This document shows positions 1 to 36,100 of a stretch of DNA of 64,000 bases, piece by piece. The notes below the pieces were generated by a model that did not search any database, was not told where the DNA came from, and was given only the letters and a program-made list of their open reading frames with translations. The position numbers were made by a program, and so were the translations under genes. Source of the DNA: Ostrea edulis. Lineage: Eukaryota. The stretch spans positions 43,090,001 to 43,154,000 of the forward strand of contig NC_079170.1 in assembly GCF_947568905.1 (NCBI RefSeq). Direction: 5' to 3'. Every line of letters starts with the position of its first letter. Position 1 is the first letter of the stretch.

Positions 1-451
1 GTTTACAGCCAGCTGCTCATCAGTTTACAGCCAGCAGTTGATCAGTTTACAGCCAACTGTTAATCAGTTTACAGCCAACTGTTCATCAGTTTACAGCCAG
101 CTGCTCATCAGTTTACAGCCAGCAGTTGATCAGTTTACAGCCAACTGTTAATCAGTTTACAGCCAACTGTTCATCAGTTTACAGTCAGCTGCTCATCAGT
201 TTACAGCCAGCAGCCGGTCAGTTTACAGCCAGCAGCTGGTCAGTTTACAGCTAGCTACTGATCATTTACAGCCAGCTACTGACCAGTTTACAGCCAGCTG
301 CTCCCCAGTTTATAACAGGCTACCCACCAGTTTACAGCCAGCTGCTTACCAGTTTACAGCCAGCTACTCACGAGTTTACAGCTAGCTACACATCATTTAC
401 AGCCAGCTACTGACCAGTTTACAGCCAACTACTCACCAGTTTACAGCCAGC
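1..451 (-). repeat. 22-bp minisatellite = FBXL13 exon tail + 5' splice site
   Basis: Minus-strand unit GCTGGCTGTAAACTG|GTGAGTA, about 20 copies in window; the terminal unit is the real exon end (437) and donor. Confidence 0.95.
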
Positions 452-3400
452 TAAGTTTAGGGATGTTAGATAACGACAGCAGAAGGCAAGGTTCTTGATA
501 GCACCATCTGTCAACAGCTGGAAATAAAGAAGAGTATGGGTTGAAAGGTGTTTATCTTCACTAACACCCACACCAGGTATAAGTACTCAGAATCATCTTT
601 TTTAAATTTTCGTTTGACTTCTCACAATTTGTTGTACAGGGGAGTGGTACCTTGCAGTGTGATAAGTCCAGCCTCTCGATGTCCTTACATTGCTGTGTGA
701 ATTTCTGTAGACCCAGGTCAGTGATGTCTGCACACTCGGAGAGGGTAACGTCCCTCAAGTGGTTATTGTATTTCCCCAAAGATGACAGCCCCTGTAAATA
801 AACAAAACAGAATACAACTCCACATACTGATGGTCATGGCTCATTTATATTGTAAATTTGTGGAATTATTTGAATTTTTGGAAGTCAATTATCATAGATT
901 GGCAAGATTGTACCATTATGTTGGGATGTCAATTTGTGGATATGGTTTCTGTAGATTCATACATCATAGGACTTTGTGTAAGATTGTTGTGGTTTGAAAT
1001 TTTTTGAATAAGGGCATCCATTGACAGCCTCAAAAATTGAGCCCTCATAAAATGTAATGACTCCACAGAATACACATGTAAGGGCCAGATATCATCTAAT
1101 TGACAGGCATATTGATAAAAACAGGATCTGGAAACATATCCCTCACATGGCATACCAAGGAGTGCTTCATACAGAAACACAAAATACTGCTTTATAATAC
1201 TTCATCCGAACAGTTACAGCCGGATATATCCAGAAACACTAGACACTGCTTACCTCATCCAAACAGTTACATCCGGATATATCCAGAAACACTAAACAGC
1301 CGGATATATCCATGCAGAAACACTAAACACTGCTTACCTCATCTGAACAGTTACAGCCATGCAGATATCTCCAGGGAAACTAAACACTGCTTACCTCATC
1401 CGAACAGTTACAGCCGGATATATCCAGGGAAACTAAAGCATGCAGCTGACCCAGAAGTTCTATCCCTGATTTCTCACTGATGTGTTCACAGAAACAAACA
1501 CTCAGGTACACCATATTCTTAAACCTGCAATTCGAATAACCACAGTCATGATATTTCACATTAACTTTCAAAACTGATACATACTGTAAGTTGCTTTGAT
1601 TTCACATTAAGTAAAATCTACTTTTAAAATTTTGATTATGAAAGCAATATGATGTTATTTGAAATATTCTGAATAATAATGTCATTCACTATAGGTTTGA
1701 TTTCGTGGAAAAATGATAAATCATGAACATAGTGAAATTAAAACCATCCTGTTCATTTCCCAGTCTTTAGTATTCATATCTTCATCGCTGTTTTGCAAGT
1801 CTGGGTGTTATTTTGGAATAAAGGACTGAATCGCATCATTTTCCTTTTAAAGCGAGCGCAGTTTGGTTGCAGTTTTGACTGACAAGCACTTACTTCCTGA
1901 TATTAAACATGGCCATGTCTCCCACTCGTATACAGTTAGTCAAGTTCAGTTCCCTCAGGGACCCAGCACATGATCCTTCAGCCAAGTTCTGGACGCCCGT
2001 GTTGGTTATCCTGCCAAAGAATTGTAAGCATTACTTCAGACACATAAACTATCCAGTCATTATCTCACAGGTAGAGGTGCTCTTTTTATATAAGTTATCT
2101 TTAAATCATACGAGGACTTAGAGATTTTGTTACTTATAGAAATGTTCTAATAATGCTCATTCTTATGCACTACACATGATAGTGTAGACTCCTTCTTTTA
2201 CGTACTAAATACTTTTGAAATATCACGAAATGTCTCAAATTGTGAAAACATGAATTCGCAAGTAGTCTGTTGATTAAGAGTTTTTACATGTATGTCAACA
2301 ATATAAAAAAAAGTGAGTAATTTTATTTCATCAGCGTTGCTTTTCGATAAAGTACCCAATAATGAATTCTTCACATCGTATATCTACAAATCTTCATTAC
2401 CTGTTTTTAACATCACAAATTCAATCATATTTTGTTCTCATTAGATAAATGGTTATTGTGCGTAGATTACTTACTGCACGACATCAGCTATGTTACAGAC
2501 GACAAGTTTCGTGCAGTTTGCGATTGCCTTCAGTGACACGTCTGTCAGTCTCTGGCAGTCTGCCAAATACAGATGCTCCAGGTCTGTACAGTTTTTCCCT
2601 ATTGCTTTCAGGGATAAATCCGACATTCTCTGGTTACCTAAAAAAACCCAGAAATAACATGTCACACTGAGGAAAAAAACCTCTGATTAATCAAAGTGAC
2701 ACAAATAAGTAGAATGAGTGACTCAGTACCTTGATTATGAATCACATATAATTCATCACTATCAGTTTAAACATGTTTTCGGCAAACACAAAGTCATGAT
2801 GTCTATATCAAAGTTATAGACCCAAACAGATAAACAGAAAACTTGATCTCCAAGTGCCACATTGCTCTACATGTACATGTATATGTTCATATGATGCAAA
2901 ATCTACCAGCACACAGAAAAGTTTTAAAATGCAATATTTTACAATGCGCATATTCATATTACAATACTATTGCGAATTGCAAATTAATTTCACAAATTTT
3001 CGTACGACGGTATACAGTTGTGTCTGTATAGGAAATAACTAGTGTCTGTATTACATAGTAAAATATCAGCAAGAAGGCTATTAATACTGTAATGCGTTGG
3101 GGTCGATCTAACTGTCAGAAAGAACATACATTTTGTTTTTTCATCCTGACAAGTCCATTATGCTACTAAATTCTACATTACATATATTAGCATAAATCTG
3201 ATCTGTGTTATCACCACAGAGATGCATATTAGTTACCTTCTACTCGCAGTTTCCGGAGATGCCTGTTGTTAGCCAGTCGTTTGAATGTTTCGTCAGTCAG
3301 CAGTGGCGATCCAAGGATGGACAGGGTGTGGATCTTGGTACATTTAGCAGCTATGGCCTAAAAAAGCATTGCATAAACCAGTACTGTATAACGTGTAAAT

Positions 3401-6400
3401 CTTCTTTTGTTACCAATGAATACACTCTGAATCCGTGTTTTATACTGAATTGTACAGGATATCTGATTTTTGGTAAGTACTGTATCTAGTTTTATTCATG
3501 AGGCTTTCATTTATAAAAATTTTTTGAGTACACTCGCATCTTTGATGGCCATGAGTTTCTAATTTTAAAATGCTAATCTTCCAGGGTTTGGAAAGAAGAG
3601 AAGCCTATCATAAAACCTTCGCAACATGAGATTACAGTAAAACTTTAGATCTCATAACAGATTTCCTGTCTGCATTTACTAACATAATATAAACACAATA
3701 TCAACCATTTTCGATAGTTTCCTATGGTGCATGCATTAAAAAAGAGTTTCGTGGAGATTTTCTGATGCAGTCATTACATGACAACGCTTGAGGAGAAGAT
3801 GGAGGTACAGAATAAGACTTCAGATACTCACTATCATACAGTCGTCATTGAGAGTCGGAAACTCATTCAGAATTAGCGTCTGTAACATAGTACAACCATG
3901 TGAGAGGCTCTTAAAACCATCTGGAGTTATCTGGAAGAAGAGCATTTAATGAGAGTTACATCCTGAAGAAAATGCAAATCAATAAAAAGAATAATTTCCA
4001 CTTGAAATAGTTTTTCTGACTGATTATTTAAAAATTCAAGCAGAATCTGAACTGCATCTTCAGTGAAATTCCCTCCGGATTCCTTACAGTGGATTAAGGC
4101 ACCAGCTTACCTGGAGGCATCCAGACAAGTCCAGGTATTCCAGTTTCTTACTGCACTTTCCAGCAGACAGGTACTGCAGTCCGCGGTCAGAGAACTTCTT
4201 ACAGTAGCCCAGACTCAGGAACTGGACATTGTGGCAGTACCTGGTCAGCGAGGAAAATGGGGTCATTTCAGTGGGTGGAGAAATGTGGTCATTTCATTGG
4301 ATGGAGACACAGGCACTCAATGTTTTAAATATATACATACTATTAGATAAAAAATATGTCTTCCTATAAATAAACTGGGAATATGTTTATAGGAAGACAA
4401 ATATTTTATCATATTAAATATTAAAAATGTTGAGTGCCTGTGGGTGGAGGAATGTACATGACATAACTATCATATGATACATATATCGTATGATTATAAA
4501 GTACATGTATATGTACTTTTATACCTGCATCACTTTAAGAATATAATTTTCTTACTTCCTTGACCATAAATGTTATTCGCATGATGAGAGCGGTACATTA
4601 CCGGCATGTATCAAATTTTCCTGGTTTAAGTACATGTATAATTCATGGGGACTTGACTTTATACTTGTAAAGTCATTATTCTTTTAAGGAGAACAACTCA
4701 AATTAATGGGCATATAATAAGGGAAATTAAACTCTATGAATATTGAATTAACGATTTTACAAAATATGTTCTGTCTTACTGATTTCAAATTACATCGATG
4801 ACTATTTTGATGATAATCAGATAAAAGACTGTACAATTTATCTGCAGTACTTACTTAGAAATGGTCCTCAGCGAAGCATCGGTAATGTGGGTGTGGGACA
4901 GATTGAGGTACAGGATAATTTTACAGCCTTTTACAACTAATTTTAGGGACTCATCCTAGAAAAAAAATTCAGATATTCATTTTATGAATAAAATGTACAA
5001 GACTTAGTATATATAAAAACACTTATAGATCTCTAAACAATTTAACAAAAAAAATTTTCACATAATATCTTTGGTTGCTTAGATTAATTAACCTCTAGTT
5101 ACAAATTTAGTCATACTAATTGTCCAAGATTAAATTAAGATAAAGCGTTCTGACAAAATACTGTCTATTTATTGCATGAATTATTAACAGTTTGTTTGTT
5201 TCATTAGTAAATACAGTTGAACTTTCAAATATGGTATTTCAAATATCGGTATCTTGAATACCATGGACATGTTAAAGTACGTGCGCTGGAAGTCCCAACT
5301 ACATTTTGTTTCTGGGCACGATCAAGTTCGAGATAACAAGGTTTGACGGTACTTACATCCAGACCCTTGCACTCTGACAGGTTGAGATCCTGTAGATTTC
5401 TGCATTCACTGACGGCCATGAAGGTGGAGGAGTGAAGCTGGGAACAGCCGCGCATGCTCAGGTGAATCAGGTACGGCCGACATTTAGACAGGAGTTTTGT
5501 GGTCACCGTGTCAGTCACTCTGTTAGTGAGATTTCCGAGATAGAGGCTTAGTCTATATAGAGTTTACATTTTCTCAAGAAAAAAAATGCTCGAATTACAT
5601 TAAAAAATTTAGATTAAAAGCTAGGAAAATAATTAACTCAACCAACTAGCCCAAAAACTGATTTTCAAACTGTATGTAATTATTAATTTAAATATGGTAC
5701 AGTAATTCATATATGAATTGTGTTTTAACTTGTATACTCGGAAGAAAACTTCTCTTCTTTAAACCTTAACATGATCAGCCATCAAAAAGAAGTCTTGAAA
5801 TTAAATTTTATAATAAAAAAAATTTCATGTTTAGTTCTAACTCTATAATCTATAAAGCAAAAATGATATGAATATTATACTTGATTTCTCTAGCAATTCT
5901 ACAAAGCTGTTGTTAATATTTACAAGTATTTCTCTTCACAAGAACATGGGTTTATGCTGCAGACATTTAACATGAACAAGACACTACACTTCACAACTAC
6001 AGCATAATTATTTCTGACGAGACTAGAAGTAGATTTCTCTATTTCTTTTCTAGGACAGCTGCAAGAGAGGTTATATACAAAGGGCAATAACTGTGATGTA
6101 TCTTGTAAGCAGTGAGTGGCTTCCCCTTCACCTGTGAAACAGTCTATTAAAAAGGATTTTTCAAAAACTCCATAATGTTCTGTGACAAAAACCTAAAGAA
6201 TATTGATTAAGGAATTAAGAAAGCCAAAACATATCTAAAATTCATTAATGAAATATGATTTGTCAATACAATGAGCATCTGATTATATCTGAATGATATC
6301 ATTCACTCCCATGAACCATTTAACACTGTAAATTAATTTGGATAAAATAGAGAATCTGTATGAAACACTGTATCATTAAAACTTAAATTCATTGCAAGTT

Positions 6401-9400
6401 AGGAATTTGTCTACGCTCTCCTATATCAGAAAATTTTGGCACAATGGATTTTTTTTTTAATGGCAGATGATGAGAAATTGCAAATATTGAAAGCTAGCTT
6501 CCAAATTTCCTTTCATATGAATCATAATTGCATAAAATAAAAATAATTATAATTAATCAAAAAGTGTCAAAAATATTTCTATGTACAGTAAAACACAGAT
6601 ACAGTGAACATGTTTATAATGAATTCACATTTACAGCAAAGTGATTTTCATTCCCTGCAGTTTTAAAACATATCATGAATTTATTGAATATAATAAATCA
6701 TTTTTTGGTGATAATTGTTTATGGGGGAAATCGGGACATCTTATGTAATGATATGACAATGTTTTATATTTGCTAATTTCCCCCTTTGTTTGTGGACCTT
6801 CATTTTTGTTATTTTTTCCAAATGATATATTTCATTCTCAGTCCATTCCTTGTCATTTAATAAAAACAAGCTTTGGTGAGCTGTTTCTTGTAAGGAGAAC
6901 TGTATGAGACAAATGTAGTTGTTTGTCCCCAGCACTTCACAATAAGCATGTTTTACTGTAATTGTTCGTCCCCCAGCACTTCACTATAAGCATGTTTTTA
7001 CTGTAATTGTTCGTCCCCAGCACTTCACTATAAGCGTGTTTTACTGTAATTGTTCGTCCCCAGCACTTCACTATAAGCATGTTTTACTGTAATTGTTCGT
7101 CCCCAGCATTTCACTATAAGCGTGTTTTACTGTAATTGTTCGTCCCCAGCACGTCACTATAAGCGTGTTTTACTGTAATTGTTCGTCCCCAGCACTTCCC
7201 TATAAGTGTGTTTTACTGTAATTGTTCATCCCCAGCACTTCATTATAAGCGTGTTTTACTGTAATTATTTGTCCCCAGCACTTCACTATAAGCGTGTTTT
7301 ACTGTAATTGTTCATCCCCAGCACTTCACTATAAGCATGTTTTACTGTAATTGTTCGTCCCCCAGCACTTCACTATAAGCATGTTTTACTGTAATTGTTC
7401 GTCCCCAGCACTTCACTATAAGCGTGTTTTACTGTAATTGTTCGTCCCCAGCACTTCACTATAAACGTGTTTTACTGTAATTGTTCATCCCCAGCACTTC
7501 ACTATCAGCGTGTTTTACTGTACTTTTCTACTTTAAGAAAAATCTGCCCAAATATTCCACTGCCAAAGTCAGCTGATATACAATTATATAGAGTTTTTGA
7601 GAGGAAACAGTATTACACACTAGATATATATAAAGCCCGAGGCTCTGGTGTTAAATATTAAACAGTGTATATATACACAGGCTGGTAATATATGACATAT
7701 AGCTTCAATAATGTGTCTCATACCCATAGGCCAATCTACATGGTCCAGTCAAAAAATCCAAGCCAAAAATAGAAGGAAAAAATCCAACACAGTTATAACA
7801 CACATTTCTGGGCATGCAAAGTTTAGTGCAGAATTAATTCATGATTTTTGATATATTCTAAATTTCTTTGCGATTTTAATGGGCTGTAATGATTTTGTAT
7901 ATCAATTATTGCTTGATTCTACTCACAAGATGTGTATGGTGTGATTGATAAGGATGAAGGAAATTCCTAATTCTTTTTTTTCACCAGGTAATGTAATACT
8001 TAATCATATCTCACTGATTGCCTGTGTCATATTATGTGTTACAGAATTATTGTATAATGCTAATATTCAGTGTGCAATAAACATCTTTCAGACAGTAAAA
8101 TAGCCCATAAAAATGGCATGCATGTTGTGCATTAATTAACCCAATCCATGATGGTTAAAATCTTAGAACACTGTAGGGTCAGTATTATTTGTGCAGGGTA
8201 GGATCAGAGGTAACAATGAATACAGGGGAAATGTTAAGGTGACCTTAAAACAGATGAACCCAATAACATGTGTATAAAACTACACAAAAAACTCATCAAC
8301 CACACCCACTCTCCCAGCCAACACCCAGTCCCATCAACCACGCCCACTCTCCCAGCCAACAACCATGCAGTCCCATCAAACTCATACATAATTGCATATC
8401 TTCAATCGTGTGTGACTAATCTTAAGACCATACGATTTTCTGCATTTCAAATACATTTTCTAGCCCATTGATATTATAATATTAATTTCCATGCAATATG
8501 TGTAATACCAATTTGATAATTGCAGGTTACAGCTATTTACTTTACAATTTGAAGCTTACAAAATGTACATATTAAGTGAGAGGGGTTTTTCATTATTATA
8601 TAAACACATCAAAAGAAGGAAATAAATTCAATAAAATTTTTTGCAAGCTTAACTAACATGAATATATGAGAGCTGAAACATTAGTCGAATAATACAGCCT
8701 CAGTACCTTAAAGGAATAGCTCCAAATTATTGACACATGCCATTACAATGAGGTATAGTGTAATTAAAGAGTTTAAATAAATGTATGATTTCAAACTTAA
8801 TGCAGTGAAGACGAGGACTATGCATTCTGTATTGCATTTATAAACATATTTTATAAGAATAATTATGGGATGAAATATTACATCTTAAAAGTATCTGAAC
8901 TGATGCTGCAATTTATCATGCGAGAAGAATTTAGAAGTACTTTGATATGAAATCTTTTCAGTAAGTGTTCTTTGGAACCTGTTTTAAATTCAGCACATAA
9001 ATCATACCTGTTTCTCACTTTGCTGAAATCCAGCTGAAGAAAAAAGAAAAATTAATTCTATTTCATATGAGTCTTATCATGCAATGTACATATCAAATAT
9101 GACATTTATATCAGCATCACAAATGACTTATCATTACATTGTACCTTATGTTCTGATTCAGAAAACCAGTCATAACTACACCATCACTGATCTCAGTCAC
9201 AAATTAAAACTACTCTAAATCTCGATGAGAAATATAACATGGACATTTGTTTCAATCTACAGTATTGTTCTGTATGTGTTTGATTTAAGCAGATTTTGAA
9301 GACTGTCACATTACCAGTGAAATTTAACAATATCCGTTTACACCTTACCCTATGGTAGGCGATGACTGCCGCACGTTACCAGTGACATTTAACAATATCC

Positions 9401-12400
9401 ATTTACACCTTACCCTATGGTAGGCGATGACTGCCACGTGTTACCAGTGACATTTAACGATGTCTGTTTACACCTTACCCTATGGTAGGCGATGACTGCC
9501 ACGTGTTACCAGTGACATTTAACAATATCCATTTACACCTTACCCTATGGTAGGCGATGACTGCCACGTGTTACCAGTGAAATTTAACGATATCTGTTTA
9601 CACCTTACCCTATGGTAGGCGATGACTGCCACGTGTTACCAGTGAAATTTAACGATATCTGTTTACACCTTACCCTATGGTAGGCGATGACTGCCACATG
9701 TTACCAGTGACATTTAACGATATCTGTTTACACCTTACCCTATGGTAGGCGATGACTGCCACGTGTTACCAGTGACATTTAACGATATCCATTTACACCT
9801 TACCCTATGGTAGGCGATGACTGCCACGTGTTACCAGTGACATTTAACGATATCTGTTTACACCTTACCCTATGGTAGGCGATGACTGCCACGTGTTACC
9901 AGTGACATTTAACGATGTCTGTTTACACCTTACCCTATGGTAGGCGATGACTGCCACGTGTTACCAGTGACATATAACGATATCCGTTTACACCTTACCC
10001 TATGGTAGGCGATGACTGCCACATGTTACCAGTGAAATTTAACGATATCCGTTCACACCTTACCCTATGGTAGGCGATGACTGCCACGTGTTACCAGTGA
10101 CATTTAACGATATCTGTTCACACCTTACCCTATGGTAGGCGATGACTGCCACGTGTTACCAGTGACATTTAACGATATCTGTTTACACCTTACCCTATGG
10201 TAGGCGATGACTGCCACGTGTTACCAGTGACATTTAACGATGTCTGTTTACACCTTACCCTATGGTAGGCGATGACTGCCACGTGTTACCAGTGACATTT
10301 AACGATATCTGTTTACACCTTACCCTATGGTAGGCGATGACTGCCGCACGTTACCAGTGAAATTTAACGATATCTGTTTACACCTTACCCTATGGTAGGC
10401 GATGACTGCCGCGTGTTACCAGTGACATTTAATGATATCTGTTTACACCTTACCCTATTCCAGAGACTGGAGTGGTAGGCGATGACCTTCCAGGATCTAC
10501 ACACACAGGCACAGCGGGCCAGGTCTGCGATGTCCAGAAAACTAAAGACCTGGAAATGGAATCATGGAGCATTATAAAACAACAGAGAATTGGGTACATG
10601 GTGCTCCAAACAAAGAGATATTTACTTTATCAGATTGAAGGCATACTTTATGTAGCTTGTAGGTATATGTACAACATACTAAATGTATGTGCCAAATAAA
10701 GATATTTTCACATGGAAAATATTTCAAATTTCACTTATTCCTGACCATAACAAACAGCCATGCTAAATAACAGGTTGGCACACATGAGTTACTTATTCCT
10801 ATAACTACTACTCTACATCATATACGTGTATAGTGTATATGTATGACCTTCATTAAGGAGAAGGTTTGTATAGGGTTTAGCCTGCTGTCTTCTAAGAATA
10901 TATTAATGTCTGTGTCAATTAAACACCAAATTTCTACTGTAGTACTAACACCATGTGCCAAATTTCCACTCTGATGATGCTGTGGTAGCACAGTGTTATA
11001 ATCTTGACAGTGAGCTCAATCTCGAGCTGTCTAGACAGTTTATTATTACCTTGACAGAGAGCTCAATCTCGAGCTGTCTAGAGTTCATAATTACCTTGGA
11101 AGGGAGCTCAATCTCGAGCTGTCTTAAGAGTTTATTTCCTTGACAGTCAGTTCAAACTTGAATTTCTAGAGAATTTATCATAACCTTGACAGTGAGTTCA
11201 ATCCCAAGCTTTCTAGAGAGTCTATGATTACCTTGACAGCGAGCTCAATCCCGAGCTGACCAGATAGCTTGTCCTGAGCGTCTCCATCTCCTTGACCAAA
11301 CGTCTCCTCATCGTCCACATTCTCTCCTCGCTCCAGCCTCTGTCGGCACAAACATAAACACATCAGTTCACGTACACTACAGTACACTCACTTCTGCTGT
11401 TAGTACTATATGGCTTTTAAGCATATAATAAATTAAATATTAAAATGATTATATTTTGGTTGAAGTAATATAGATTTTAGTTTTTGAGACAATTATTGCT
11501 GCCTTGGGGTATAAAGTTTAAGATAACTGCTCAAAATGATGCGGATATAAAATTTTGTCAGTAATTATTGAATTAAATAGGAAAATTTAATCAAACTCTC
11601 TAATTCTCATCACTTATATGCAAGATAAGAATGTTCACATTTTAAAAAAATGTTTTTGTTAATTTTATATAACAGAAAAGTAATGAGGGAATATGCTACA
11701 ATGTCAGATAGCAAAGAAGATAAGGAGACAGAAGATACACAGGTCACCAGTCGGAGAAGGGAGGTAACTTGCACTGAGATATTTGTTGACGTTAATTACA
11801 TTTTTAACAGTTCATCTTTATGAATATAATATGCCTTTATGTAATCAATGCATGCTGTAAAATTTAGCGGCAGCTATGCGCAAAATATGCTAATTCAGTT
11901 GTGAATGTAAATGAAGCAAACTTTCTCTATTATCAACAAGCAAAGTTGATACCTAAACTAATAACAGATTAATATACGCAGAGATAAAAATGTTCATTAA
12001 CTTACTATCCTTAAGACACTCTAGTTTCTTTCAGATTAATTCGTCAAAAATTTGTACTAAACTTTTAGATACTGAATCGAATTCAGACAAGGAATGTTTT
12101 TAATAAAAGAATTACAGCATTAATTGTACCGACTGGGAATTTGTAGAGAAAAGTCCATTCTAAGTTCTATGATTAAGAGAGAAAAGTTAGGAGGGGGGGG
12201 GGGGGGGTATAAACTGGTAGAGGGGTCAGGATGTGGGTGTTACTTTGTGGAGCTCTCAAGGTCACTTCAAGGACAAGAATCAATGGATCAGGACATTATA
12301 CATCACAAACAGGAACACATGATGAGGGATCCACTGAATTAATCAATTTTGTCTTAGCTATCCTTCACCATATTTTTCTAACAGTATAGGCATTATAAAT

Positions 12401-21400: not shown

Positions 21401-24400
21401 ACAAGTATAAGTAAATAACTGAGAAAATGAATAAATAATATGAAAAAACAGTATACAATGGATTTAATGGGTATTATATTGTTTTAACTATACTGGTTAA
21501 AATGCCATAATTCCCACATTGCATAAAATCAAAAGGAGAAAATTTTCAATCCATCAAGAATTCAAAATAACAAAAACTATAAATATTGTACTAGATATTT
21601 CCATATAGTTCTGCACCTGTATGTGATAAAAAAAAAAAAATTATCTTACTGAACCAAATCACCAGAAAAATTCTGTATCCTACACTTACAAAATACAGGC
21701 GAATGGGAAAGTCGGGAAATCGTTTCATAATTTCAAGCTAAAAGTGAACACACTTTAATAAGGTAGACTTCTAAATATATATCACAATTTTTTTTATCAG
21801 TCTCAATAGTGTTGTGTAGACCCTATAGGGAATATGGTATTAAGGATTTCAGTGAATATCAATTGTTATTTTGGGTTTGGTTGGTGAACATGATTATATG
21901 GGTATGGTAATATGAATTTAGACTATACATGTATCAATATAATAACTGTTAACAGAAATACAATCCAGTCCCATATAGGGTGTGCTTTTATCATTTTGTT
22001 TCACATGAATTAAACTACATTATATTTCATATTAAAAACATATGGATTGACTTTAAAGAAAAAGCATGTAAACATGCATGAACAATGCAGCACAGGAAAT
22101 GATTTGCTATTTCAAAAATTCATATTGCACATGAATGGAAACCTATAATTGGATGGATTTACATTTTTTAAAGAAAAACCACTAAAATTACATCTCAATC
22201 AAACAATGCATCAAATAAAAAAAAAAAAGAAACATGTTCTATGTATCGGACTGACTTTCTATTAGAATAAATATGATATCTTCATACCTCCCCCCTTTTC
22301 ACTGACTATATATATATGCATGCTCTGTTATAAATGACATGTGACCAAGAAAAATGGCTGCCTATTCCTGCTGCCTAATCCTATATATGTATTTATTGTT
22401 CATATATACATGAATAAATTACTGTTCAAATCAAATCAAGTATAATAGATATACAAGAACTATTACTTTGGTGTTTAATTACCTGGCCATATTTTTTCAG
22501 TTTTATATCATGATTTATTCTCATGCATATGTCTAGCTTTATGTTTTGTGACACAGCCAAAACAACATGTAATATGTGAGGAAATGCTTCAGCATATATA
22601 TCTAAAATTCTCAATAAGGACATGATAACCACAGCATGGATTACTTACAATCATACTCTCGTCGTCAAGGTTGAAGATGAAATCCAAGTTGCTCTCTGTA
22701 ATGATTTTATTTGGAGGCCTCATGTGTTCTTCCACAAACATATCCCTACAAAATGACAGAAGTCATTGTAGTACTCCATCTTTAACTTCCACAGAACTCA
22801 TTGTAGTACCCCATCTTTAACTTCCACAGACTTTTCTTGATATTAAACTGATATATAAAGTACATGTATTAATTACTAAATAATGCCTACAAATTTACAC
22901 CAAGAAATTCAGTGGAAGTACGTTCATATGTGTAATGACATATTGATTCAAAAACTTTCTAATCATTTTGTTCTACTTTTGAATCATTTTGTAGTACATT
23001 TTTTCTACATATAAAACTTTCTAATCATTTTGTTCTACTTTTGAATCATTTTGTAGTACATTTTTTCTATATATAAAACTTTCTAATCATTTTGTAGTAC
23101 ATTTTTTCTACGTATTTATGAACTGTAGTAAGGAGTGGAGGACTGTTAACCAATGCTCTAACTAACAGGAGTATCCACAGAGCCAAAGTCATTTAAAGAA
23201 AGACAACTAGTCTATAAGATAGAATACAATAGACCCTATACTTTCTAATGAACTGATAGTTCGCTTTTAATGTGTGTAATCAATCTGTAACAGATGGGGC
23301 TATATGGACCATGGATATTGGCCTGGGTAGCTCAGTGACTGGTTAGAGCACCTTATTAGTGATGCAGGGGTCTCAGATTCGATTCCCGGCCCAGCCATAA
23401 ATTTTCTCCCTTCCTAAATATATTACATTTGGTGCAGTTGACCACCCCTTCAGGTGAAAGTCCTGCCAAAAGCAAAAAAATCTGAGTTGTGTGTCTTTGA
23501 GAGTGAAAACAATTAAGGAGGGAGTAAAATGTAGTACACCTAATTAAGTCTATATGGACTATGTGGATACTCAGTGCATAGAACACCTGACTAGTAAGGC
23601 AGAGGTCCCAGGTTTGATTCCTGGTCCAGCCCAAAATTTTCTCCTTTCCTATATTACAATTAAATAACACCAGATCTGATAACTTCATATTATTGAATAC
23701 TATTAAAGATGTACTACAATTTCAAACTTGATAGGATTCAAATACCAATTAAGCTCATCAATTCCATTTTCTTTCAGGCATCTGAGTTTATCAAGGATAA
23801 ACTGAAGTGGATCTCCAGGACACATAACTGCTAATCCTGTGAGAAGGGCCTGCAATGTAACAATAAGGTCAATCAGACAGTGAAACACAGGAATATCAAC
23901 CTGAACAGAGACACATAGCAAAAAATAACAGTTGTCCAAAGTCTCACATTATCTCATGGCCTGTGGTACTTTGATAAAAATGCACAATTTATGCTCTGAT
24001 TTAAAATTCATTTTACCATTTTGATAATCAAAGATCTATATTAATTTCGTCCAAATCCTATCAAGAAAACATTTAAATATATTTCTATAACAGAAAAATT
24101 AAAGCGTGGTCTCAAGAGGGCAACACATGCTCTGAAAGTCGACCAAATCAGCAAGATTTTAGCTTGCAATTTTTTTTTAAATTTGCCTCAATTATCTTTT
24201 GTTTAAACTTCACTTCACATCAGTTCATCAAACCAATTAACAGTCTATGCGAAAGACATCGGACCGTCGGACCTGACCGATGTGCAGTGCCTCAGGTCCG
24301 ATGTGTCATTTTTTACACCGGACCGGAATGTCCGATGTCTCAGTATTCGGTTTTAAGCTTTATTATTTTGACGCGGAGTCAATTAAATGTTTGTTATAAG

Positions 24401-25919
24401 TAAAAAATATCACACAAATCCAAATACGTAAATGAATGTGATTAAACCGCATGGACCGTCTAAAGTATTATGCGGGAGGGATCCCTGGTATAGTATTACT
24501 AGTATAATAAATAAGATTTCCTTGGTTTTGCATTTTCACGTGTTTCTCTTTTTTACATTAGGTTTTTCGGTCTGACAAAATTTGGTTCGGTCCGGTGTGT
24601 TCATTGATTACACAGGACCGAATGTCCTGTGTGGTCCAAAAAACTTTCGTATAGACTGAATTAATATATAAAAATTGATAATTTATAGGTGCATGAGCCC
24701 ATGAAATTAAGAGGTAAACACACTGCTGAAGGAGTGGCTAGTCTCACGTTATATAATGCCTCTGATATATGATGCTGGTCATATCACGTTAAAAGAATAA
24801 AAATACTTTCATATTGGGCATTTAATTCTGGTAAATATACACAGTGAACACTTTGTGAATTAACTTAAAATGAATAAAAGTTATCATGGAAACACATCAC
24901 ATCACCTCCCCTGGTCCATGGAATTAGCAGAAACGCCGAAAACTCAAGGTAATTACCAAAAACACCCCCAAAAATGCCAAAAACACCAATAATCATTAAA
25001 ACACATATACATGATATTAGATCATATTTACAGAGTGTATATACATGTACATTCCCAAAGTTTTGTTCAAATTGATAGAAAATTGAATGATTTATGGCTA
25101 ATCTTTATCAGCATGTATAGATGCTCCACAATAGTTGCCGTGCTATTTATAGCAACTTCATCGGACATATTATATCTAATCTTATTGTAATGGAAAAATA
25201 TATTTGTCACATCTTCAAAACAGAAATGATGGTTGCAATGTGAATGAATTTTATGAAATGACAAATAACCACCTCCTTTGCCAACGATGTCGCCGAGAAA
25301 TGCAATTTCAAAACTTAGCCATAAATCATTCAATTTTCCAATGTAATGGTCAACCTAGTTCGATCGCCAGTGGCCAGATAGATCAGATGGTAGAGCACCT
25401 GAGTGGAGATTCAGAGGGACCGGGTTCGAATCCCAGTTGGTCCATTGCATTTTCTCCCTTCCTTCCTGTTCCACTATCAATATGAAACTTTGGTAACAAA
25501 TGCGCGTACATGAGATTTACCTAACACCCTGTAAGTGAATTTTAATGATACATTGATGGGGGTTGGGGGGTACTTTCTGTGGAGTTTTTGGTAATTACCT
25601 GATGCTTTCGGTATTTCCTTGAATTCCATGGAACCCTCGCTACTGTACTGTATAATCATAACTATTAAACTATTCAATAGTTTATTGACAGTATTGTTGC
25701 TGTAAACAATTTTGCTTTTTACGTCACAAATACGTATTTCATTCGGTAATATAACTAAATAAATTGTACATGGCCTTTATCCTCTGTAAATTTGCTGCTT
25801 CGGGTTGTTACTACATTTCCCTGCACGCACCTACACCTTACCTCGTATATATCTGGGAGCTTGTTAGAGCGAAGATAACGCTTCAATTCGGGCGTCTGCC
25901 CCTTCATTGAGGCAGCCAT
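437..25919 (-). CDS. FBXL13: F-box and leucine-rich repeat protein 13 (dynein regulatory complex subunit 6), 3' end outside window
   Basis: 20 GT-AG exons joined in frame: 25842-25919 (alternative in-frame ATG at 25928), 23746-23849, 22649-22745, 16920-16987, 15962-16082, 15630-15663, 14711-14820, 11232-11339, 10454-10549, 9008-9033, 5357-5519, 4855-4955, 4111-4240, 3832-3930, 3237-3357, 2475-2637, 1894-2010, 1395-1524, 651-791, 437-517. Product: N-terminal D/D-like segment (ELKRYLRSNKLPDIYEALLTGLAVMCPGDPLQFI), basic helical region, F-box (VFSFLDIADLARCACVCRSWK...LWN) and AMN1-type LRRs (CRNLQDLNLSEC, KKLEYLDLSGCLQ), collinear with vertebrate FBXL13 as recalled. Confidence 0.93.
1185..1438 (-). 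repeat. ~54-57-bp repeat = FBXL13 exon tail + donor
   Basis: Copies of CTGGATATATCCGGCTGTAACTGTTCGGATGAG|GTAAGCAGTG; donors at 1394 (true), 1337 and 1253, plus a degenerate copy. Confidence 0.92.
6921..7521. repeat. 43-bp intronic minisatellite, ~14 copies
   Basis: Unit CCCAGCACTTCACTATAAGCGTGTTTTACTGTAATTGTTCGTC. Confidence 0.95.
9310..10458 (-). repeat. 65-bp minisatellite containing F-box exon sequence and donor, ~17 copies
   Basis: Minus unit GTCATCGCCTACCATAGG|GTAAGGTGTAAACAGATATCGTTAAATGTCACTGGTAACACGTGGCA; period 65 (9481, 9546, 9611...). Confidence 0.96.
11001..11260 (-). repeat. 44-47-bp repeat = FBXL13 exon tail + donor, 5 extra copies
   Basis: Variants of AGCTCGGGATTGAGCTCGCTGTCAAG|GTAAT with exon-end equivalents at 11232 (true), 11185, 11139, 11095, 11050, 11003. 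Confidence 0.9.
14940..15616. repeat. ~37-bp minisatellite starting just inside FBXL13 intron 6
   Basis: Unit ATGTCGACTGATATGATACGATTACATGATATTATTA, increasingly degenerate toward 14940. Confidence 0.9.
20365..20522. repeat. AT-rich imperfect palindrome (foldback/MITE relic)
   Basis: ATTGTTAATTTAACATTAA ... TTAATGTTAATTTAACAAT inverted arms. Confidence 0.45.
20557..20685. mobile_element. Short MITE-like element
   Basis: Inverted ends AGACTCAGTCTTGGATTTCTCGAAA / TTTCAAGAAATCCAGGCTGGGTCT. Confidence 0.45.
23286..23658 (+). mobile_element. TRIM-like miniature LTR element with tRNA-like cassette in both terminal repeats
   Basis: Repeat 1 23286-23427 (TGTAA...TTACA), PBS-like TTTGGTGCAG at 23428, purine tract AAGGAGGGAGTAAAA before repeat 2 23530-23658 (TGTAG...TTACA). 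Both repeats contain A-box/B-box-like motifs (TAGCTCAGTG; GATTCGATTCC / GGTTTGATTCC). No clean TSD. Confidence 0.6.
24241..24658. mobile_element. MITE, CAG...CTG termini, 6-bp TSD
   Basis: TIR CAGTCTATGCGAAAG / CTTTCGTATAGACTG; AATTAA on both flanks. Confidence 0.8.
25342..25473 (+). mobile_element. Solo tRNA-like terminal repeat / tRNA-derived repeat
   Basis: GGCCAGATAGATCAGATGGTAGAGCACCTGA...GGGTTCGAATCCC...TTTTCTCCCTTCC..TGTTCCA; same organisation as the 23286 repeats. Confidence 0.55.
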
Positions 25920-26674
25920 GGTTGCCATTTTTGTAACAAAAAAGAAAACTGTGGTACTGAACTACAAGTTAATCAGTGCAGAATGGGAAAAAAGCATTTC
26001 AAGTTGGAAAGAACAAACATCCCGCCATATTGTTTGGTAGCAACAAGATACCCGGATGTTAGGTTAGATAATGGGAAGTTTGGTTAATTCGTTCTTTATA
26101 AATTCGGGGGGGGGGGGTCATATTGTTTATGCATTTATATATATATATGAACATTGGACATGCATATTTACATTCTCAATGTGTTTGCCTTCGATATCTT
26201 TACCATAATTGGTTAAAAAGCTCAACAGAGCTTGTGTTGACTTATTAAATGTATACGGTATCGACTTCAAATAAAATTTACTGTACTACATTTAAGTTTA
26301 TTGAAAAGATAGCCATTTCCTCATGAATTCATGTGAACGATGTGCATATGAATCTTGTTAAATATAGAACGACTATTCCATAACGACTGGGAATTCTCCG
26401 ACATAAATGAAAAGAGAATGTATATACATGTATATAAAAAAAAAAAATGAATTTCAGTCTTGAAAATACATTATAGGGTATGAACAGCAACGCTTTGAAC
26501 AAGCTTTTAAGTTAACTCGATACTCACAGTTTTATCTGATACAAGTTTAAAATGTGTATTTCTTTCCATTCATTAGAGTTAAAACTAACAAATTATCATA
26601 TAAAATACACAGGTCATCACACTTTTTAAGATATGAGACGTACATAAACAGAATCAGGAGAGTAGTCAGCTGAT

Positions 26675-31379: not shown

Positions 31380-31706
31380 CTCAATCCGCGCAGACGCAGA
31401 TAGCATTGCTTCAATGCTTGTCCCATCGAGATAGCGGTGCCCACTTTTATTTTCCTTCATAAATATGTAGAAATTACGACCAACATTACGTGTCTAAGCC
31501 CTGGAAATTTGATTTCATTCCTTCTATATACAACAGATCTTGCAACCGATTGACTGGTCAGACCAAGTTTTCGTTGCACCTGTCTGTACTATCCCTTGTT
31601 CGCGCAAGCTCGAGTGTGGCGCAGTCGCACCACAAAATCTCATCACCTGCCCGTGTCCCTGCGCACGCAGTGTTAAATTTGCTAACAATGTTTACAAACG
31701 AAGCAC
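31380..31706 (+). promoter_or_regulatory. Probable NRF1 promoter / first exon
   Basis: Locally CpG-rich island in an AT-rich background, ending in donor GCAC|GTAAG at 31707. The next exon acceptor TTTCAG|G at 33095 lies upstream of the NRF1 ATG. Inferred, no transcript data. Confidence 0.45.
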
Positions 31707-32336
31707 GTAAGAGGAGAAAATGGGAGAAAAGAAAGAAATGTACATGTATGGATGTATTAAGCTAATCAATATGGCCGTTTTCACAAATATAATTATCTCC
31801 CTTTAGCATGTTACCCTCCATATAGATATATCAATATTTACTGGTGTTAACTCAATGAGACAAAAAAAACGCAAGAACTTTACGCGAGTTGTAATTCATT
31901 TGATATCAATAAAAAAAATGAGCCTGGGTAGTTTTACTTTGCTTTAGTTGTTGCAATTAACATGCATACGGTATGGTCATCCCATATTGCACCCATCTAG
32001 CTTGCATCTTCACGGATCAGTGCCCCATATTGTTAGAATGCCAAAACATACAATATCTGAAGGATGAGGACATAGCAGGAAAAAATTTTCACTCTCTCCA
32101 TGAATGTCCAAATTCGACATTACAAATTTGATTGTGCAGCTTTTGATCATATTGTATATATTGCATATAAATTAACAATGTAATGCATGTCCTTTGGAAT
32201 AAAACGGTATGTTTTCACCCAAAATTTAACCTTAAATTCATTACTGGTTCAAATGTCATGAAGATTATACCTCCATTACACTGTACCTGATTACATTGTA
32301 ATTAAATGTAGTTTTGCACAATTATTATTGTGTATG

Positions 32337-32677
32337 CAGGGCTCGAAATTAACATATGCCCGTCAGTCTGACTGGTTAAAAATCTGGCGGGCTGACATAC
32401 ATTTGTTTTAGTCAGTCCGATGGGACTGGTTAATTTTCTAAAGCATCATTTTGGTAAATATACTTATGAAATCTTATACACGCTGCACATTTGGCATGCT
32501 TCGATCTGTAGATGTCAGAGGCAATAAGTTAAATTTCATTTTATTAGCATTAACGAAATATGTTTCATTATTTCTTGAAAGCTCTGTTGGACTGGTAAAT
32601 TTTTCAGCGGACTGGTTGAAATTATACCCCATCAGTCCGGCTGGACTGGTGACATAAAAAGTTAGCTTCAAGCCCTG
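32337..32677. mobile_element. MITE, CAG...CTG termini, 5-bp TSD (NRF1 intron 1)
   Basis: CAGGGCTCGAAATTAAC / GTTAGCTTCAAGCCCTG; GTATG on both flanks. Confidence 0.85.
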
Positions 32678-33166
32678 GTATGAACTGTCAGTAAAGATTT
32701 TGAAGTCAAGAATTACATGTCAATTGTGACATAAAGATTTAAATGTCGCATTTCAAATGATGAATATTTTGAAACTTGAACTTTAAAATTAAACAGATAT
32801 GTTTAAGTGAATCTTTTATAAATCTCTCTTGTCCTACTAAATTTGCATGAGGTGAATTGCAAACAAATTTGTAGAAACTAAAGATCTCTAAAAATTTTCA
32901 GAATGTGTTTTTGTTTTATATGGGGGGAAAATTCCATTCTTTTATAGATTGAAATATGATCTGCCCCTGTAATTTATTGATATTTCAAACTTAGAATAAT
33001 CTTGAAGCTTGATGATCATCAACAGTGACAATACATGCCCAGTTGCATTCACTACGCCTATGTCCACAAACATTCTTTGGACTTCATCTTTCAGGTTGTG
33101 AAACTCCCACTAAACGGCATCGCCTCCTATTGGACCCAGGTGGGCAGAGCTAAATTCTTCGCTCCG

Positions 33167-36100
33167 ATGATGAATAATCTGGTCTCCAGTGGGGGTGCCA
33201 TTCAGGGTAACTTCACCATGACGACCTCCATGAACTCGGGGATGATCAGCGATGATCTCAGTGAGCCGAGTTCACCAGAGAGCTCGTTTGATGCCTCCGA
33301 CTTGCTGGGATCAAACAGCATTAATGACGAGGTCACAGCACAGTTAGCCAGTTCAGGTACGACAGATTTGACGACTGAGAATACGATGTTATGATAATCG
33401 CAGACAAACAAGGATTATGGGGATATTTTGTATTTAAAGACAAGTGCGAAACTTGTTCTTGATGAAAAAATAAGAAAACATTGTGCACTCCTAACATTCT
33501 ACAACTTCAGAAAATCAAGTAAAATGGCACAATTAGTGTATATTATTATTTGAATAGTATGAAAAGTATTAAAATTTGATGCAAACTAAGACAGGGCCTG
33601 TTATGGTGATTATCACTGATTTTATTACTGATTTTTAGGTACAATAGGAATGGCTGCCGCTGCAGCAATTGCCAGTGGCAGAAAACACAAGAGACCTCAT
33701 ACATTTGAGACCAATCCATCGATACGAAAACGACAACAGACCAGACTTCTAAGGTAAGCGGGGATGTAATTCAGTATACTTCGACATAGACTTAATCTTT
33801 TTTTTTTAAAATGATTCAGGTAGGTTATTATCAAATTAAAAGTTGTAGATTATTGAAAGCAAACAATGTACAGCTGTCATAGACAGAAAAAGTTCTATTA
33901 ATACATACACAGTGTACAACACTAGAAAATATATAAACGCTAGTCAAACATACTCTCATGAGTTCTCATGATTTTTACCTCATTTGCATACTGTTCAAAC
34001 CTCACTCACAGTTGAATCACATTTGATTCAGATGTGACGAGGTTAGGAAATTCTGTACGGACAACGCTAGTCCGGTAGCCTGAGGCTAGTAAATTTTGTC
34101 CCAGACTATCTGAATATCATTTATAAGTAGTCCGGTGGACTACTAAAAAATTCGAACTCTGTACTTTCTTGCAAACTTCCTTTCTGCTTTCATTTCTATT
34201 GTAAATCGGTATGAATACAATGAACTTATCTTTGATGGAGCTGACTAAATTGAATGTTACAGTGTCACTACCGAGCTTAGAACTATATTCATAATACATC
34301 ATACCGTGATTCAAGCAGATGGTGGTTTAATGTGAGACTCAGAAAAAATAGAGGCTTAATTCGGTCTTCAAATTTTCATTTATTTGTTTCAAAATTTCGC
34401 ATTTAGACTTTGAAAATCAGGAGAGGACAAGCCCCCTCCTGCACTTTCCCCCCCTCGTCGCTTTGCGATTTAGTCGTCTGCCTTTGGCAGAAGGACTAGT
34501 CACTCTACAGTTTTAAACATCTGTGCTCTATCTCTAATATTTGTAATGTGTGGTCCCTTGTAGGAAGTTGAAGTCCTGTATAGAGGAGTACACAACCCGA
34601 GTAGGACAACAGGCAGTGGTGCTGTGTTGTACACCAGGGAAGTCTCAAAACTCTAACAACTACAAAGTCTTTGGTTCCCAGCCATTAGAAAATGTGGTAA
34701 GTAGGTACTTCAGCCATTAGAAACTGGTAAGTAGGTTAGGAACTCCAGCCATTAGAGACTGTGGTAAGTAGGTTAGGAACTCCAGCCATTAGAGACTGTG
34801 GTAAGTAGGTTAGGAACTCCAGCCATTAGAGACTGTGGTAAGTAAGTTAAGAACTCCAGCCATTAGAGACTGGTAAGTAGGTTAGGAACTCCAGCCATTA
34901 GAGACTGTGGTAAGTAGGTTAATAACTCCAGCCATGAGAGACTGTGGTAAGTAGGTTAAGAACTCCAGCCATTAGAGACTGGTAAGTAGGAACTTTCATA
35001 ACTTGCAGGTTAGGGATCTCCGGTGGATTTTTATTTGGTCCTGTAAAATTTCTTGGCACTACCAAATTTTCATTTATCAAGTTATAGGATATGATGCACA
35101 AATTATATGTCAAGTTTCCACCACTTAGATGTAAACAATGTTCAGTTTGTACCCGAGACTTATACAAGAAAGAATAGCTATTATCTTTACATGAAGGCAA
35201 GCATAGATGTGCAAAGTATAGGAGTGACTGTTCCTGTTACCACAAACTTTGAATGGTTTCAATGGAGAACAGAATAAAATGGCACTCACGAAAGACATTG
35301 CAGTAGTTACTTATTGAGTGACAAACCTCTATGATATCTACTTGTCTAGAGTTGCATATGAGTTCTAAGATGTTACGGCTCTGAATGATCCTGTTTTCTT
35401 TTCCCAGATAAGGAATTGTAAATCAGTGGTGCTACAGGATTTAGAATCTACCTTAGCAGAACAAGTCCCACAGTCTCAAGATGTCACAGGCATGCAGGAG
35501 TTACCACCCTTGTCCATCGACGGAATTCCAACTTCAGTTGACAAAATGACTCAGGTTCAGTCAGCATACATAAGAAAAATTGTGAAATGATGTGAAAACA
35601 ACTTTATTGTCTAAGAATATGTGTAAAAGATGCACTGATTTGTTAACTTTTGATATACAAAAGCACATCCTGGGTAACTGTCACACACATGCTCTGGTAA
35701 CAGGAAACACTTGCATTGTGCCGTGTACCTACAACATGTGATCTAGGCCTAATTGGTTTTTTTATGTTCATCATAGAATTATGGTATGACACAGTGTGTT
35801 TGTCTGTCCATCTGTCAGCATGTTGTGGGTCAGGAATATTAAAACTTAAACGATCAAAGATCATCAAACTTGATAAACATGTTCTCAATGATTAGAGGAA
35901 AAAGCCAATCAGCATGTTGTGGGTCAGGAATATTAAAACTTATACGATCAAAGATCATCAAACTTGATAAACATGTTCTCAATGATTAGAGGGAAAAGCC
36001 AATCATTGAAAGGGACTGGTTCACAATTTTTGAAATAAAATATTTTTTCAATTTTGATGTTAAACATTGAAAATATAACTCATTTATTGTTGACAGCCAA

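What the first reader, a model, noticed from the sequence alone, without database searches (positions are those of the whole stretch)
1..34992. Recurrent splice-donor-anchored minisatellites: five unrelated arrays each built from an exon 3' end plus its 5' splice site
Seen: arrays at 1-451, 1185-1438, 9310-10458, 11001-11260 (FBXL13, minus) and 34676-34992 (NRF1, plus) share no sequence with each other, yet each unit = last 15-40 nt of the upstream exon + GT donor + start of the intron, amplified into the intron. That is 5 of roughly 27 coding donors in the two genes. I found no array spanning an acceptor plus exon start. By hand translation, use of any downstream donor copy introduces a stop or frameshift. 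Inference: a mutational process targeted to donors (e.g. slippage or R-loops at co-transcriptional splicing or pausing sites), and/or a selected system of decoy U1 sites that tunes productive versus NMD splicing or protects introns from premature polyadenylation. Intron creation from tandem arrays is known; this donor-only, exon-tail-copying pattern is not something I can place in a named category.
Basis: partly seen in the sequence, partly recalled or inferred. Interest (0 to 1): 0.85.

Follow-up and report, generated by a model that had tools for sequence, protein, structure and literature searches.

The report
Splice-donor minisatellites in oyster genes
In two flat-oyster genes, short stretches spanning an exon end and its splice donor have been copied head-to-tail into the intron; this is real and far more frequent than chance, but it is a known kind of repeat ("mirage" minisatellites, as in human F7) and the cell still uses the first, true donor.

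Summary
All five arrays exist, and each starts with the last 16-43 nt of an exon plus its GT donor. The genes are FBXL13/DRC6 on the minus strand and NRF1 on the plus strand of Ostrea edulis. Every spare donor would give a stop or a frameshift.

The pattern exceeds chance. In the whole O. edulis FBXL13 gene, 5 of 25 coding donors carry such an array, one of them outside the window. Counting NRF1, 10 arrays span donors against 1.7 expected (P about 1e-5), and none spans an acceptor.

A spliced transcript contig shows the first, authentic donor in use at both arrays tested. No RNA contig lies on the repeat units.

The category is not new. Human F7, IFI6, CBS, LMNB2 and PDGF carry donor-spanning minisatellites, and amphioxus has "mirages". 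The donor-only rule is not general: the same gene has acceptor-spanning arrays in a pearl oyster and in amphioxus.

The copies look young and tolerated, not selected. One old array has lost GT in about half its units.

This scan had already found the same phenomenon at three other places in this genome. The cause of the donor-side excess is unresolved.

The parts
1..452 (-). Array A1. The 22-nt unit is 16 nt of FBXL13 exon 23 tail (AGCTGGCTGTAAACTG) plus GTGAGT. The last exon base is 437. The array runs on about 194 nt beyond the window start, for about 30 units in all.
   Evidence: (L002 26477-27122)
1198..1437 (-). Array A2. The 53-57-nt unit is 43 nt of FBXL13 exon 21 tail (..LDISGCNCSDE) plus GTAAGC. 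The last exon base is 1395.
9311..10458 (-). Array A3, 65 nt x17.7 at 95% identity. The unit is the F-box exon 11 tail (with a 15-nt internal deletion) plus GTAAGG plus 47 nt of intron. The last exon base is 10454. The array fills about 1143 of the 1420 nt of intron 11. All 17 copies keep AGG|GTAAGG.
   Evidence: edges present in DNA runs X2, X3, X15
10996..11258 (-). Array A4, 47 nt x5.7 at about 77% identity, the oldest array. The unit is 27 nt of exon 10 tail (..GIELAVK) plus GTAATC. The last exon base is 11232.
   Evidence: spanned without gaps by contigs of three other DNA runs
34678..34994 (+). Array A5, 37 nt x8.8 at 90% identity. The unit is 19 nt of NRF1 coding exon 3 tail (CCAGCCATTAGAAAATGTG) plus GTAAGTAGG. 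The last exon base is 34696.
437..25928 (-). FBXL13/DRC6 gene, coding exons 1-23 of 26. Exons 24-26 and a sixth donor array at exon 24 lie beyond the window start.
   Evidence: window coordinate = 26929 minus L002 coordinate
33167..40904 (+). NRF1 coding region: 8 coding exons, 460 aa.
9009..9034 (-). 26-nt exon 12 of FBXL13, the acceptor partner of the intron that holds A3.

Best explanation
These are junction-spanning ('mirage'-type) minisatellites. A short segment covering the end of an exon, its 5' splice site and the first bases of the intron was duplicated in tandem. Slippage or unequal exchange then amplified it, so the intron now begins with 3 to 30 near-copies of the donor.

Shown:
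- The anatomy of each array.
- The independence and youth of the arrays.
- Their excess at donors in two oyster genera.
- Splicing at the first, authentic donor for A3 and A4.

Inferred:
- They persist because the spliceosome takes the most upstream of a run of identical donors, as shown experimentally for human F7. Copies lying downstream are therefore silent pseudo-sites, and any rare use yields a premature stop and presumably decay.
- They are tolerated by-products that lengthen introns, not a regulatory device.
- Why they arise or persist about six times more often at donors than at random gene positions is unresolved. Possible causes are a mutational bias at junctions, or asymmetric purifying selection on top of a general junction bias.
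For: - Anatomy.
- First donor used: X20 contig record 17 joins 11232|10549 and 10454|26-nt exon|5519, and the RNA run has zero depth over both arrays.
- No RefSeq isoform uses a copy.
- All copies are poison sites.
- Excess: 10 donor-spanning arrays against 1.72 expected (Poisson P 1.3e-5). The unselected C. virginica replicate gives 4 against 0.66 (P 0.002).
- Youth and turnover: within-array identity is 76-100%, while orthologous O. edulis and C. virginica introns share no detectable similarity, and arrays sit mostly at different junctions.
- Decay of donors: about 17 of 30 A1 units lack GT, and the GT-less type was amplified as a higher-order repeat. In A4, of the five repeat units read in the sequence, three keep GT and two have GA or AT.
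- Precedent: the most upstream of identical 5' sites is selected in F7, and the same architecture occurs in IFI6, CBS, LMNB2 and PDGF (PMC1557585). Amphioxus mirages do not disturb splicing (PMC3087553).
- Negative control: Sinanodonta FBXL13 has 32 arrays and none spans a junction.
Against: - A purely neutral, uniformly arising process predicts about 1.7 donor arrays, not 10. Something favours donors, and tolerance alone does not explain that.
- RNA evidence is one assembled contig from one run. Contigs drop rare isoforms, so low-level use of spare donors is not excluded. Human IFI6 and CBS do use the two nearest pseudo-sites.
- A1, A2 and A5 have no RNA or read evidence here.
- In the young arrays all copies keep an intact donor (A3 17/17, and A5 6 of 6 copies found by the probe scan). 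For A3, by my own reading of the sequence (not counted), the variable sites look like CpG transitions that the donor 9-mer lacks.
Confidence: 0.78

Rival explanations
1. Donor-targeted mutational hot spot. Tandem duplications start preferentially at 5' splice sites, for example at sites of polymerase pausing, R-loops or U1 binding in germline-expressed genes, or because donor-like motifs favour slippage or recombination. The arrays are the neutral residue. This concerns the origin of the excess and is compatible with the best explanation for everything else.
For: - About six-fold excess over uniform placement, replicated in a second genus, and 10:0 donors against acceptors (binomial P 0.001).
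- Further arrays start at +0, +7 and +22 after donors.
- Three short O. edulis arrays end 10-14 nt before acceptors without including the AG. This fits junction-proximal origin plus a filter against extra acceptors.
Against: - No direct evidence of mechanism.
- Acceptor-spanning arrays exist in the same gene in Pinctada and Branchiostoma and, by earlier unchecked scan notes, elsewhere in O. edulis.
- The sample is two genes and two oyster species.
- Differential survival could mimic a mutational bias.
Confidence: 0.3
2. Selected decoy-donor system. The spare U1 sites tune productive against decay-bound splicing, or protect the intron from premature polyadenylation, and copy number sets expression.
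For: - Spare donors are intact and as strong as the true one in A3, A5 and L002 E24, and in the C. virginica arrays.
- All are poison sites.
- Human IFI6 and CBS use proximal pseudo-sites.
Against: - No use seen in the RNA contig or in annotated isoforms.
- No conservation between genera.
- Donors decay in the older arrays, and GT-less units were amplified.
- 17-30 sites in about 1 kb far exceeds any known need.
- A4 has the same copy number in four individuals, so it is not an obvious dial.
Confidence: 0.08
3. Coincidence or artefact: a repeat-rich genome in which some arrays abut exons by chance, or mis-assembly of repeats.
For: The window was picked from a very large scan, so a one-window P value is inflated. 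A3 is collapsed in short-read contigs.
Against: - Replication in an unselected locus of another genus.
- A repeat-richer mussel orthologue has 32 arrays and none at a junction.
- A4 and both A3 edges are confirmed in three other DNA runs.
- Diverged copies cannot be made by assembly.
Confidence: 0.03

Closest known systems
Human donor-spanning minisatellites: F7 intron 7 (37 bp), IFI6/6-16 intron 2, CBS intron 13, LMNB2, PDGF (PMC1557585)
   Same: The first monomer spans the exon-intron boundary and the donor is reiterated in the intron. The most upstream site is used and the pseudo-sites are silent or little used. Periods run from tens of bp to about 100 bp.
   Different: The human cases are isolated, one per gene. 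Here about one donor in five of a gene is affected, in two oyster genera and at different junctions. Copy-number polymorphism, the VNTR hallmark, was not shown here.
Amphioxus 'mirage' minisatellites (Adh3, globins, TnC, PGBD5; PMC3087553, PMC3902484)
   Same: Tandem duplication of exon-intron boundaries that recurs in many genes of a highly polymorphic marine invertebrate genome. It does not disturb normal splicing.
   Different: Amphioxus mirages occur at both 5' and 3' boundaries, and the FBXL13 example found here is at an acceptor. In the two oysters all ten are at donors.
Intron gain by tandem duplication of an AGGT-containing exon segment (Rogers model; discussed in PMC3087553)
   Same: Tandem duplication creates extra splice signals.
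   Different: In that model the duplicate becomes a new intron inside an exon. Here the intron already exists and is only lengthened. No new exon or intron is seen.
U1 telescripting / intronic decoy 5' splice sites (own knowledge, not tested)
   Same: Multiple intronic U1-complementary sites.
   Different: Those sites are dispersed and not exon-tail copies. No evidence of such a role was found here.

Membership tests
Junction-spanning ('mirage' / F7-type) minisatellite | Head-to-tail array with a period of about 10-100+ nt | tested here: met
   Periods are 22, 53-57, 65, 47 and 37 nt, with 2.5-30 copies.
Junction-spanning ('mirage' / F7-type) minisatellite | The first monomer contains the exon end and the authentic splice site, and later monomers repeat both | tested here: met
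   Exon ends were mapped exactly. Copies carry the exon tail plus GT at 80-100% identity.
Junction-spanning ('mirage' / F7-type) minisatellite | Normal splicing uses the authentic (outermost) site, and the copies are silent pseudo-sites | tested here: met
   Met for A3 and A4: the spliced contig in run X20 uses the first donors and no RNA contig lies on the units. RefSeq isoforms agree. Not tested for A1, A2 and A5, and rare use is not excluded.
Junction-spanning ('mirage' / F7-type) minisatellite | Copy-number instability or polymorphism | tested here: inconclusive
   A4 is identical in length in three other DNA runs. A3 is collapsed in short-read contigs. Between genera, turnover is complete.
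Selected decoy-donor / NMD-tuning element | Measurable use of spare donors | tested here: not met
   None in the RNA contig or in annotated isoforms. Contigs cannot exclude rare use.
Selected decoy-donor / NMD-tuning element | Conservation of arrays or of donor motifs | tested here: not met
   Arrays lie at different junctions and have unrelated units in C. virginica. GT is lost in about 17 of 30 A1 units.
Intron creation by tandem duplication | A new intron bounded by duplicated AGGT inside a former exon | tested here: not met
   All 25 intron positions are shared by O. edulis and C. virginica. The arrays lie inside pre-existing introns.

The most novel reading that the evidence does not exclude
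Oyster (Ostreidae) genomes have a junction-directed, strongly donor-biased tandem-duplication process. It hits about one donor in five in some genes, turns over completely between genera and is a major driver of intron growth. That would point to a splicing- or transcription-coupled mutational mechanism in the germline, not to mere tolerance.
Probability: 0.3. Interest if true: 0.6.

Novelty: new member of a known kind. Interest (0 to 1): 0.4.

Why it matters
The individual arrays are ordinary members of a known repeat class, so they need no new category. Their density and donor bias are worth recording:
- About 20% of the donors of one gene are affected.
- The arrays arose independently in two genera.
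- They stand 10:0 against acceptors and about six-fold over a uniform null.

Practical consequences:
- These arrays place hundreds of perfect pseudo-donors in introns.
- They give a natural test bed for first-come 5' splice-site choice outside mammals.
- They explain part of the intron length differences between oysters. For example, intron 21 is 148 nt in C. virginica and 603 nt in O. edulis, and intron 23 is 400 against 1271 nt.

If the excess proves mutational, exon-intron borders would be hot spots of structural mutation in these genomes.

Tried and rejected
- Assembly artefact: rejected for A3 and A4 from independent DNA contigs. It is implausible for the others because the copies have diverged.
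- Chance: rejected by permutation and by the C. virginica replicate.
- Shared origin of the arrays, or a mobile element: rejected. There is no similarity between arrays and their depth is local, unlike the 43-nt array at 6914-7522, which is a genome-wide repeat.
- Exonisation, with the exon tail derived from the repeat: rejected. The exon tails encode conserved F-box, LRR and Nrf1 residues that are 90-100% identical in other oysters.
- Three short arrays just upstream of acceptors (E3, E7, E16) were inspected as possible acceptor mirages. The AG is not included, and the similarity to the exon head is weak (only E3 shows TGTGGAAG). They were not counted.
- The array at 15022-15607 starts 22 nt after the E7 donor and does not clearly carry the exon tail. 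It was not counted.
- Look-ups that returned nothing: Saccostrea and C. gigas loci (P0186, P0234, P0242) are not on record.
- My splice mapper first failed on the 12-nt micro-exons. It later produced zero-length exons in the Pinctada array, which I removed.
- I found no paper on such arrays in oysters in the searchable library.
- Arrays at 45077-45352, 47971-48390, 49582-49710 and 57711-57987 lie outside the two modelled genes and were not assigned.
Full report
**1. What is in the sequence**

- 1-452: 22 nt x20.6
- 1198-1437: 53-57 nt
- 9311-10458: 65 nt x17.7, 95% matches
- 10996-11258: 47 nt x5.7
- 34678-34994: 37 nt x8.8

On the transcribed strand, each array begins inside an open reading frame and its first unit runs across a GT:
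- ...AGCTGGCTGTAAACTG|GTGAGT
- ...GGCTGTAACTGTTCGGATGAG|GTAAGC
- ...GTCATCGCCTACCA[15 nt]TAGG|GTAAGG
- ...GATTGAGCTCGCTGTCAAG|GTAATC
- ...CCAGCCATTAGAAAATGTG|GTAAGT

Later units repeat the exon tail and the GT. In A3 every unit lacks the same 15 nt of the exon tail.

**2. Gene models**

A 54-aa exon found full-length FBXL13 (dynein regulatory complex subunit 6) proteins. The 90% cluster of the oyster representative holds the Ostrea edulis RefSeq protein P0241 and the Crassostrea virginica protein P0239. Their loci were fetched as L002 and L001.

Exact spliced mapping gives 26 coding exons in both species, with identical intron positions. The window coordinate equals 26929 minus the L002 coordinate.

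The window holds exons 1-23. The arrays sit at the donors of:
- exon 10 (A4)
- exon 11 (A3)
- exon 21 (A2)
- exon 23 (A1)

A1 continues about 194 nt beyond the window start. A sixth array (103 nt x7.5, 40 nt of exon tail) sits at the donor of exon 24, outside the window.

NRF1 was modelled as 8 coding exons giving an uninterrupted 460-aa protein, with Pfam Nrf1_DNA-bind hits. A5 sits at the donor of coding exon 3.

In-window coding donors therefore number 30, of which 5 carry an array.

**3. Consequence of using a copy**

All five introns are phase 0. Every spare GT with at least 6/9 match to CAG|GTAAGT either includes an in-frame stop or shifts the frame.

**4. Is it more than chance?**

I placed each minisatellite (period at least 10) at random within its gene span 20,000 times. 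The test counted arrays that start within the last 60 nt of an exon and run into the intron.

| Locus | Observed at donors | Expected | P |
|---|---|---|---|
| O. edulis FBXL13 | 5 | 0.79 | 0.0007 |
| C. virginica FBXL13 | 4 | 0.66 | 0.002 |
| O. edulis NRF1 | 1 | 0.27 | 0.24 (not significant) |
| All three | 10 | 1.72 | 1.3e-5 (Poisson) |

- No array spans an acceptor, against 1.70 expected. That deficit is not significant on its own (P 0.18).
- Donors against acceptors, 10:0, gives P 0.001.
- Its arrays sit at exons 11, 14, 15 and 25. One more starts exactly at the GT of exon 24.
- Their periods are 98, 102, 77 and 69 nt, with 23-56 nt of exon tail.

**5. Independence and age**

No two arrays share sequence at blastn-short E<=1e-3. 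The orthologous introns 10, 11, 21, 23 and 24 of the two oysters share no detectable similarity. Identity within arrays is 76-100%.

All arrays are therefore younger than the Ostrea-Crassostrea split and arose separately, even at exon 11, where both species have one.

They account for much of the intron length difference:
- Intron 21 is 148 nt in C. virginica and 603 nt in O. edulis.
- Intron 23 is 400 nt against 1271 nt.
- A3 fills about 1143 of the 1420 nt of intron 11.

**6. Read evidence**

Run X20 was listed as a guessed RNA run. It holds a 2788-nt contig whose pieces lie on 11230-11341, 10454-10547 and 5360-5519. The first two pieces join directly. The last two are 26 record bases apart, which matches the 26-nt exon 12.
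- It is therefore a spliced transcript.
- Allowing for the GT shared at the joint, the junctions are 11232|10549 and 10454|9034. These are the first, authentic donors of A4 and A3.
- X20 has zero depth across both arrays.
- Contigs cannot exclude rare isoforms.

Three DNA runs from other studies (X2, X3, X15) were also laid.
- They span A4 with no gaps, so all have the same copy number.
- They enter both edges of A3 and then break, as expected for a 1.1-kb array at 95% identity.
- The 43-nt array at 6914-7522 has depth of about 10^4, so it is a dispersed genome-wide repeat, unlike the junction arrays.

RefSeq isoforms of the O. edulis gene differ only by two 12-nt micro-exons and skipping of exon 4. 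None uses a spare donor.

**7. Are the spare donors maintained?**

- Young arrays keep them: A3 17/17, the exon 24 array 7/7, A5 all copies found, C. virginica exon 15 7/7 and exon 25 5/5.
- From my reading of the A3 sequence (not a formal count), the variable sites look mostly like CpG-type transitions. The donor 9-mer has no CpG, so its intactness need not mean selection.
- In the older A1, about 17 of 30 units lack GT at the homologous position (CTGGTGAGT became CTGATGAGC and related forms). A four-unit block of GT-less variants was itself re-amplified.
- In A4, of the five repeat units read in the sequence, three keep GT and two have GA or AT.
- This argues against selection for decoy donors. 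It fits neutrality or mild selection against them.

**8. Other taxa, same gene**

- Pinctada imbricata has a 60-nt x28.8 array that spans the acceptor of exon 3. The unit is 31 nt of intron tail plus 27 nt of exon head. The authentic copy is the last one.
- Branchiostoma lanceolatum has a 65-nt x3.9 acceptor-spanning array at exon 5. Another array ends 3 nt before an acceptor.
- The freshwater mussel Sinanodonta woodiana has 32 arrays in a 67-kb gene. None spans a junction.
- So the excess is not a simple by-product of repeat richness, and donor-only is not a general rule.

**9. What is known**

PMC1557585 states that several human genes hold minisatellites whose first monomer spans an exon-intron boundary, so that the donor is reiterated in the intron. 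The genes named are F7, IFI6/6-16, CBS, LMNB2 and PDGF.
- With 50 constructs, it shows that the most upstream of identical 5' sites is selected by a 5'-to-3' scanning-type process.
- In IFI6 and CBS the two nearest pseudo-sites are also used.

PMC3087553 and PMC3902484 describe 'mirages' in amphioxus Adh3, globin, TnC and PGBD5. These are tandem duplications of either boundary that do not disturb splicing.

I found no paper on this in oysters.

Earlier notes of this scan report the same phenomenon at three other places in this genome, including acceptors and 'about one border in five' in DOCK7. I used them as leads to the name and the papers, which I then read. Their counts were not checked here.

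**10. Reading**

The arrays are new members of a known class.

Mechanism, shown:
- Tandem copies of junction segments.
- Independent and recent origin.
- First donor used at A3 and A4.

Mechanism, inferred:
- The copies are tolerated because the splicing machinery takes the first of a run of donors, and any mis-use is a poison isoform.
- Extra acceptors upstream of the true one are probably less harmless, which would contribute to the asymmetry.

Not explained:
- The six-fold excess at donors over random positions is unaccounted for.
- It calls for a junction-biased mutational input or differential survival.
- In O. edulis three short arrays also end 10-14 nt before acceptors without including the AG. 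That hints at junction-proximal origin on both sides, with a filter against extra acceptors.
- This is an inference from very few cases.

**11. Limits**

- Only two genes and two oyster species were examined.
- RNA evidence is one assembled contig.
- A1, A2 and A5 have no read support here.
- Copy-number polymorphism was not measurable.
- Four arrays in the 3' half of the window lie outside the modelled genes.

Noticed in passing
L002:27807-28586 (outside the window, just beyond its start): A sixth O. edulis FBXL13 donor array: 103 nt x7.5 at 94% identity, with 40 nt of exon 24 tail plus GTAAGT. All 7 copies keep GT.
   Followed up: yes
L001 (C. virginica FBXL13): 12151-12480, 16543-16794, 17819-18560, 23825-24241; also 22672-23478: Four donor-spanning arrays at exons 11, 14, 15 and 25, with up to 56 nt of exon tail. 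One has six 100% identical copies. In addition, a 339-nt x2.4 array starts exactly at the GT of exon 24.
   Followed up: yes
L003:6953-8681 (Pinctada imbricata FBXL13): A 60-nt x28.8 array spanning the acceptor of exon 3 (31 nt of intron tail plus 27 nt of exon head), about 28 spare acceptors upstream of the true one.
   Followed up: partly
window 22756-22830, 15677-15791, 4255-4307 (minus-strand gene): Three short two-copy arrays end 10-14 nt upstream of the FBXL13 acceptors of exons 3, 7 and 16 without including the AG. About 0.2 would be expected by chance, by my own rough calculation rather than a simulation.
   Followed up: partly
window 15022-15607: A 37/111-nt array of about 600 nt starts 22 nt after the donor of the 34-nt exon 7. 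It shows no clear exon-tail homology.
   Followed up: partly
window 6560-7560: The 43-nt x14 array and its flank have summed contig depth of about 10^4 in three DNA runs and are also present in the RNA run. This is a dispersed high-copy repeat family.
   Followed up: no
window 13246-13257 and 7724-7735: Two 12-nt micro-exons of FBXL13 (ISLR, LAYG), conserved in C. virginica. The RNA contig in X20 lacks LAYG. The RefSeq isoforms seen differ only by these two micro-exons (both absent in one isoform) and by skipping of exon 4 in another.
   Followed up: partly
window 25928-33167: FBXL13 and NRF1 are arranged head-to-head, about 7 kb apart. The spacer holds reverse-transcriptase fragments (RVT_1 at 27545-27910, minus strand).
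   Followed up: no
window 40911-40936: A run of 26 G directly after the NRF1 stop codon.
   Followed up: no
window 56668-57006 (+), 61010-61549 (-), 62624-62887 (-): Exons of three further genes: SUEL-type lectin, PQ-loop protein and a fibrinogen C-domain protein. Arrays at 45077-45352, 47971-48390, 49582-49710 and 57711-57987 were not assigned to any exon.
   Followed up: no
window 50300-63700, many places: Recurrent short ORF pieces with the motif ..RLITVRYLH.. on the plus strand, suggesting a dispersed repeat family.
   Followed up: no
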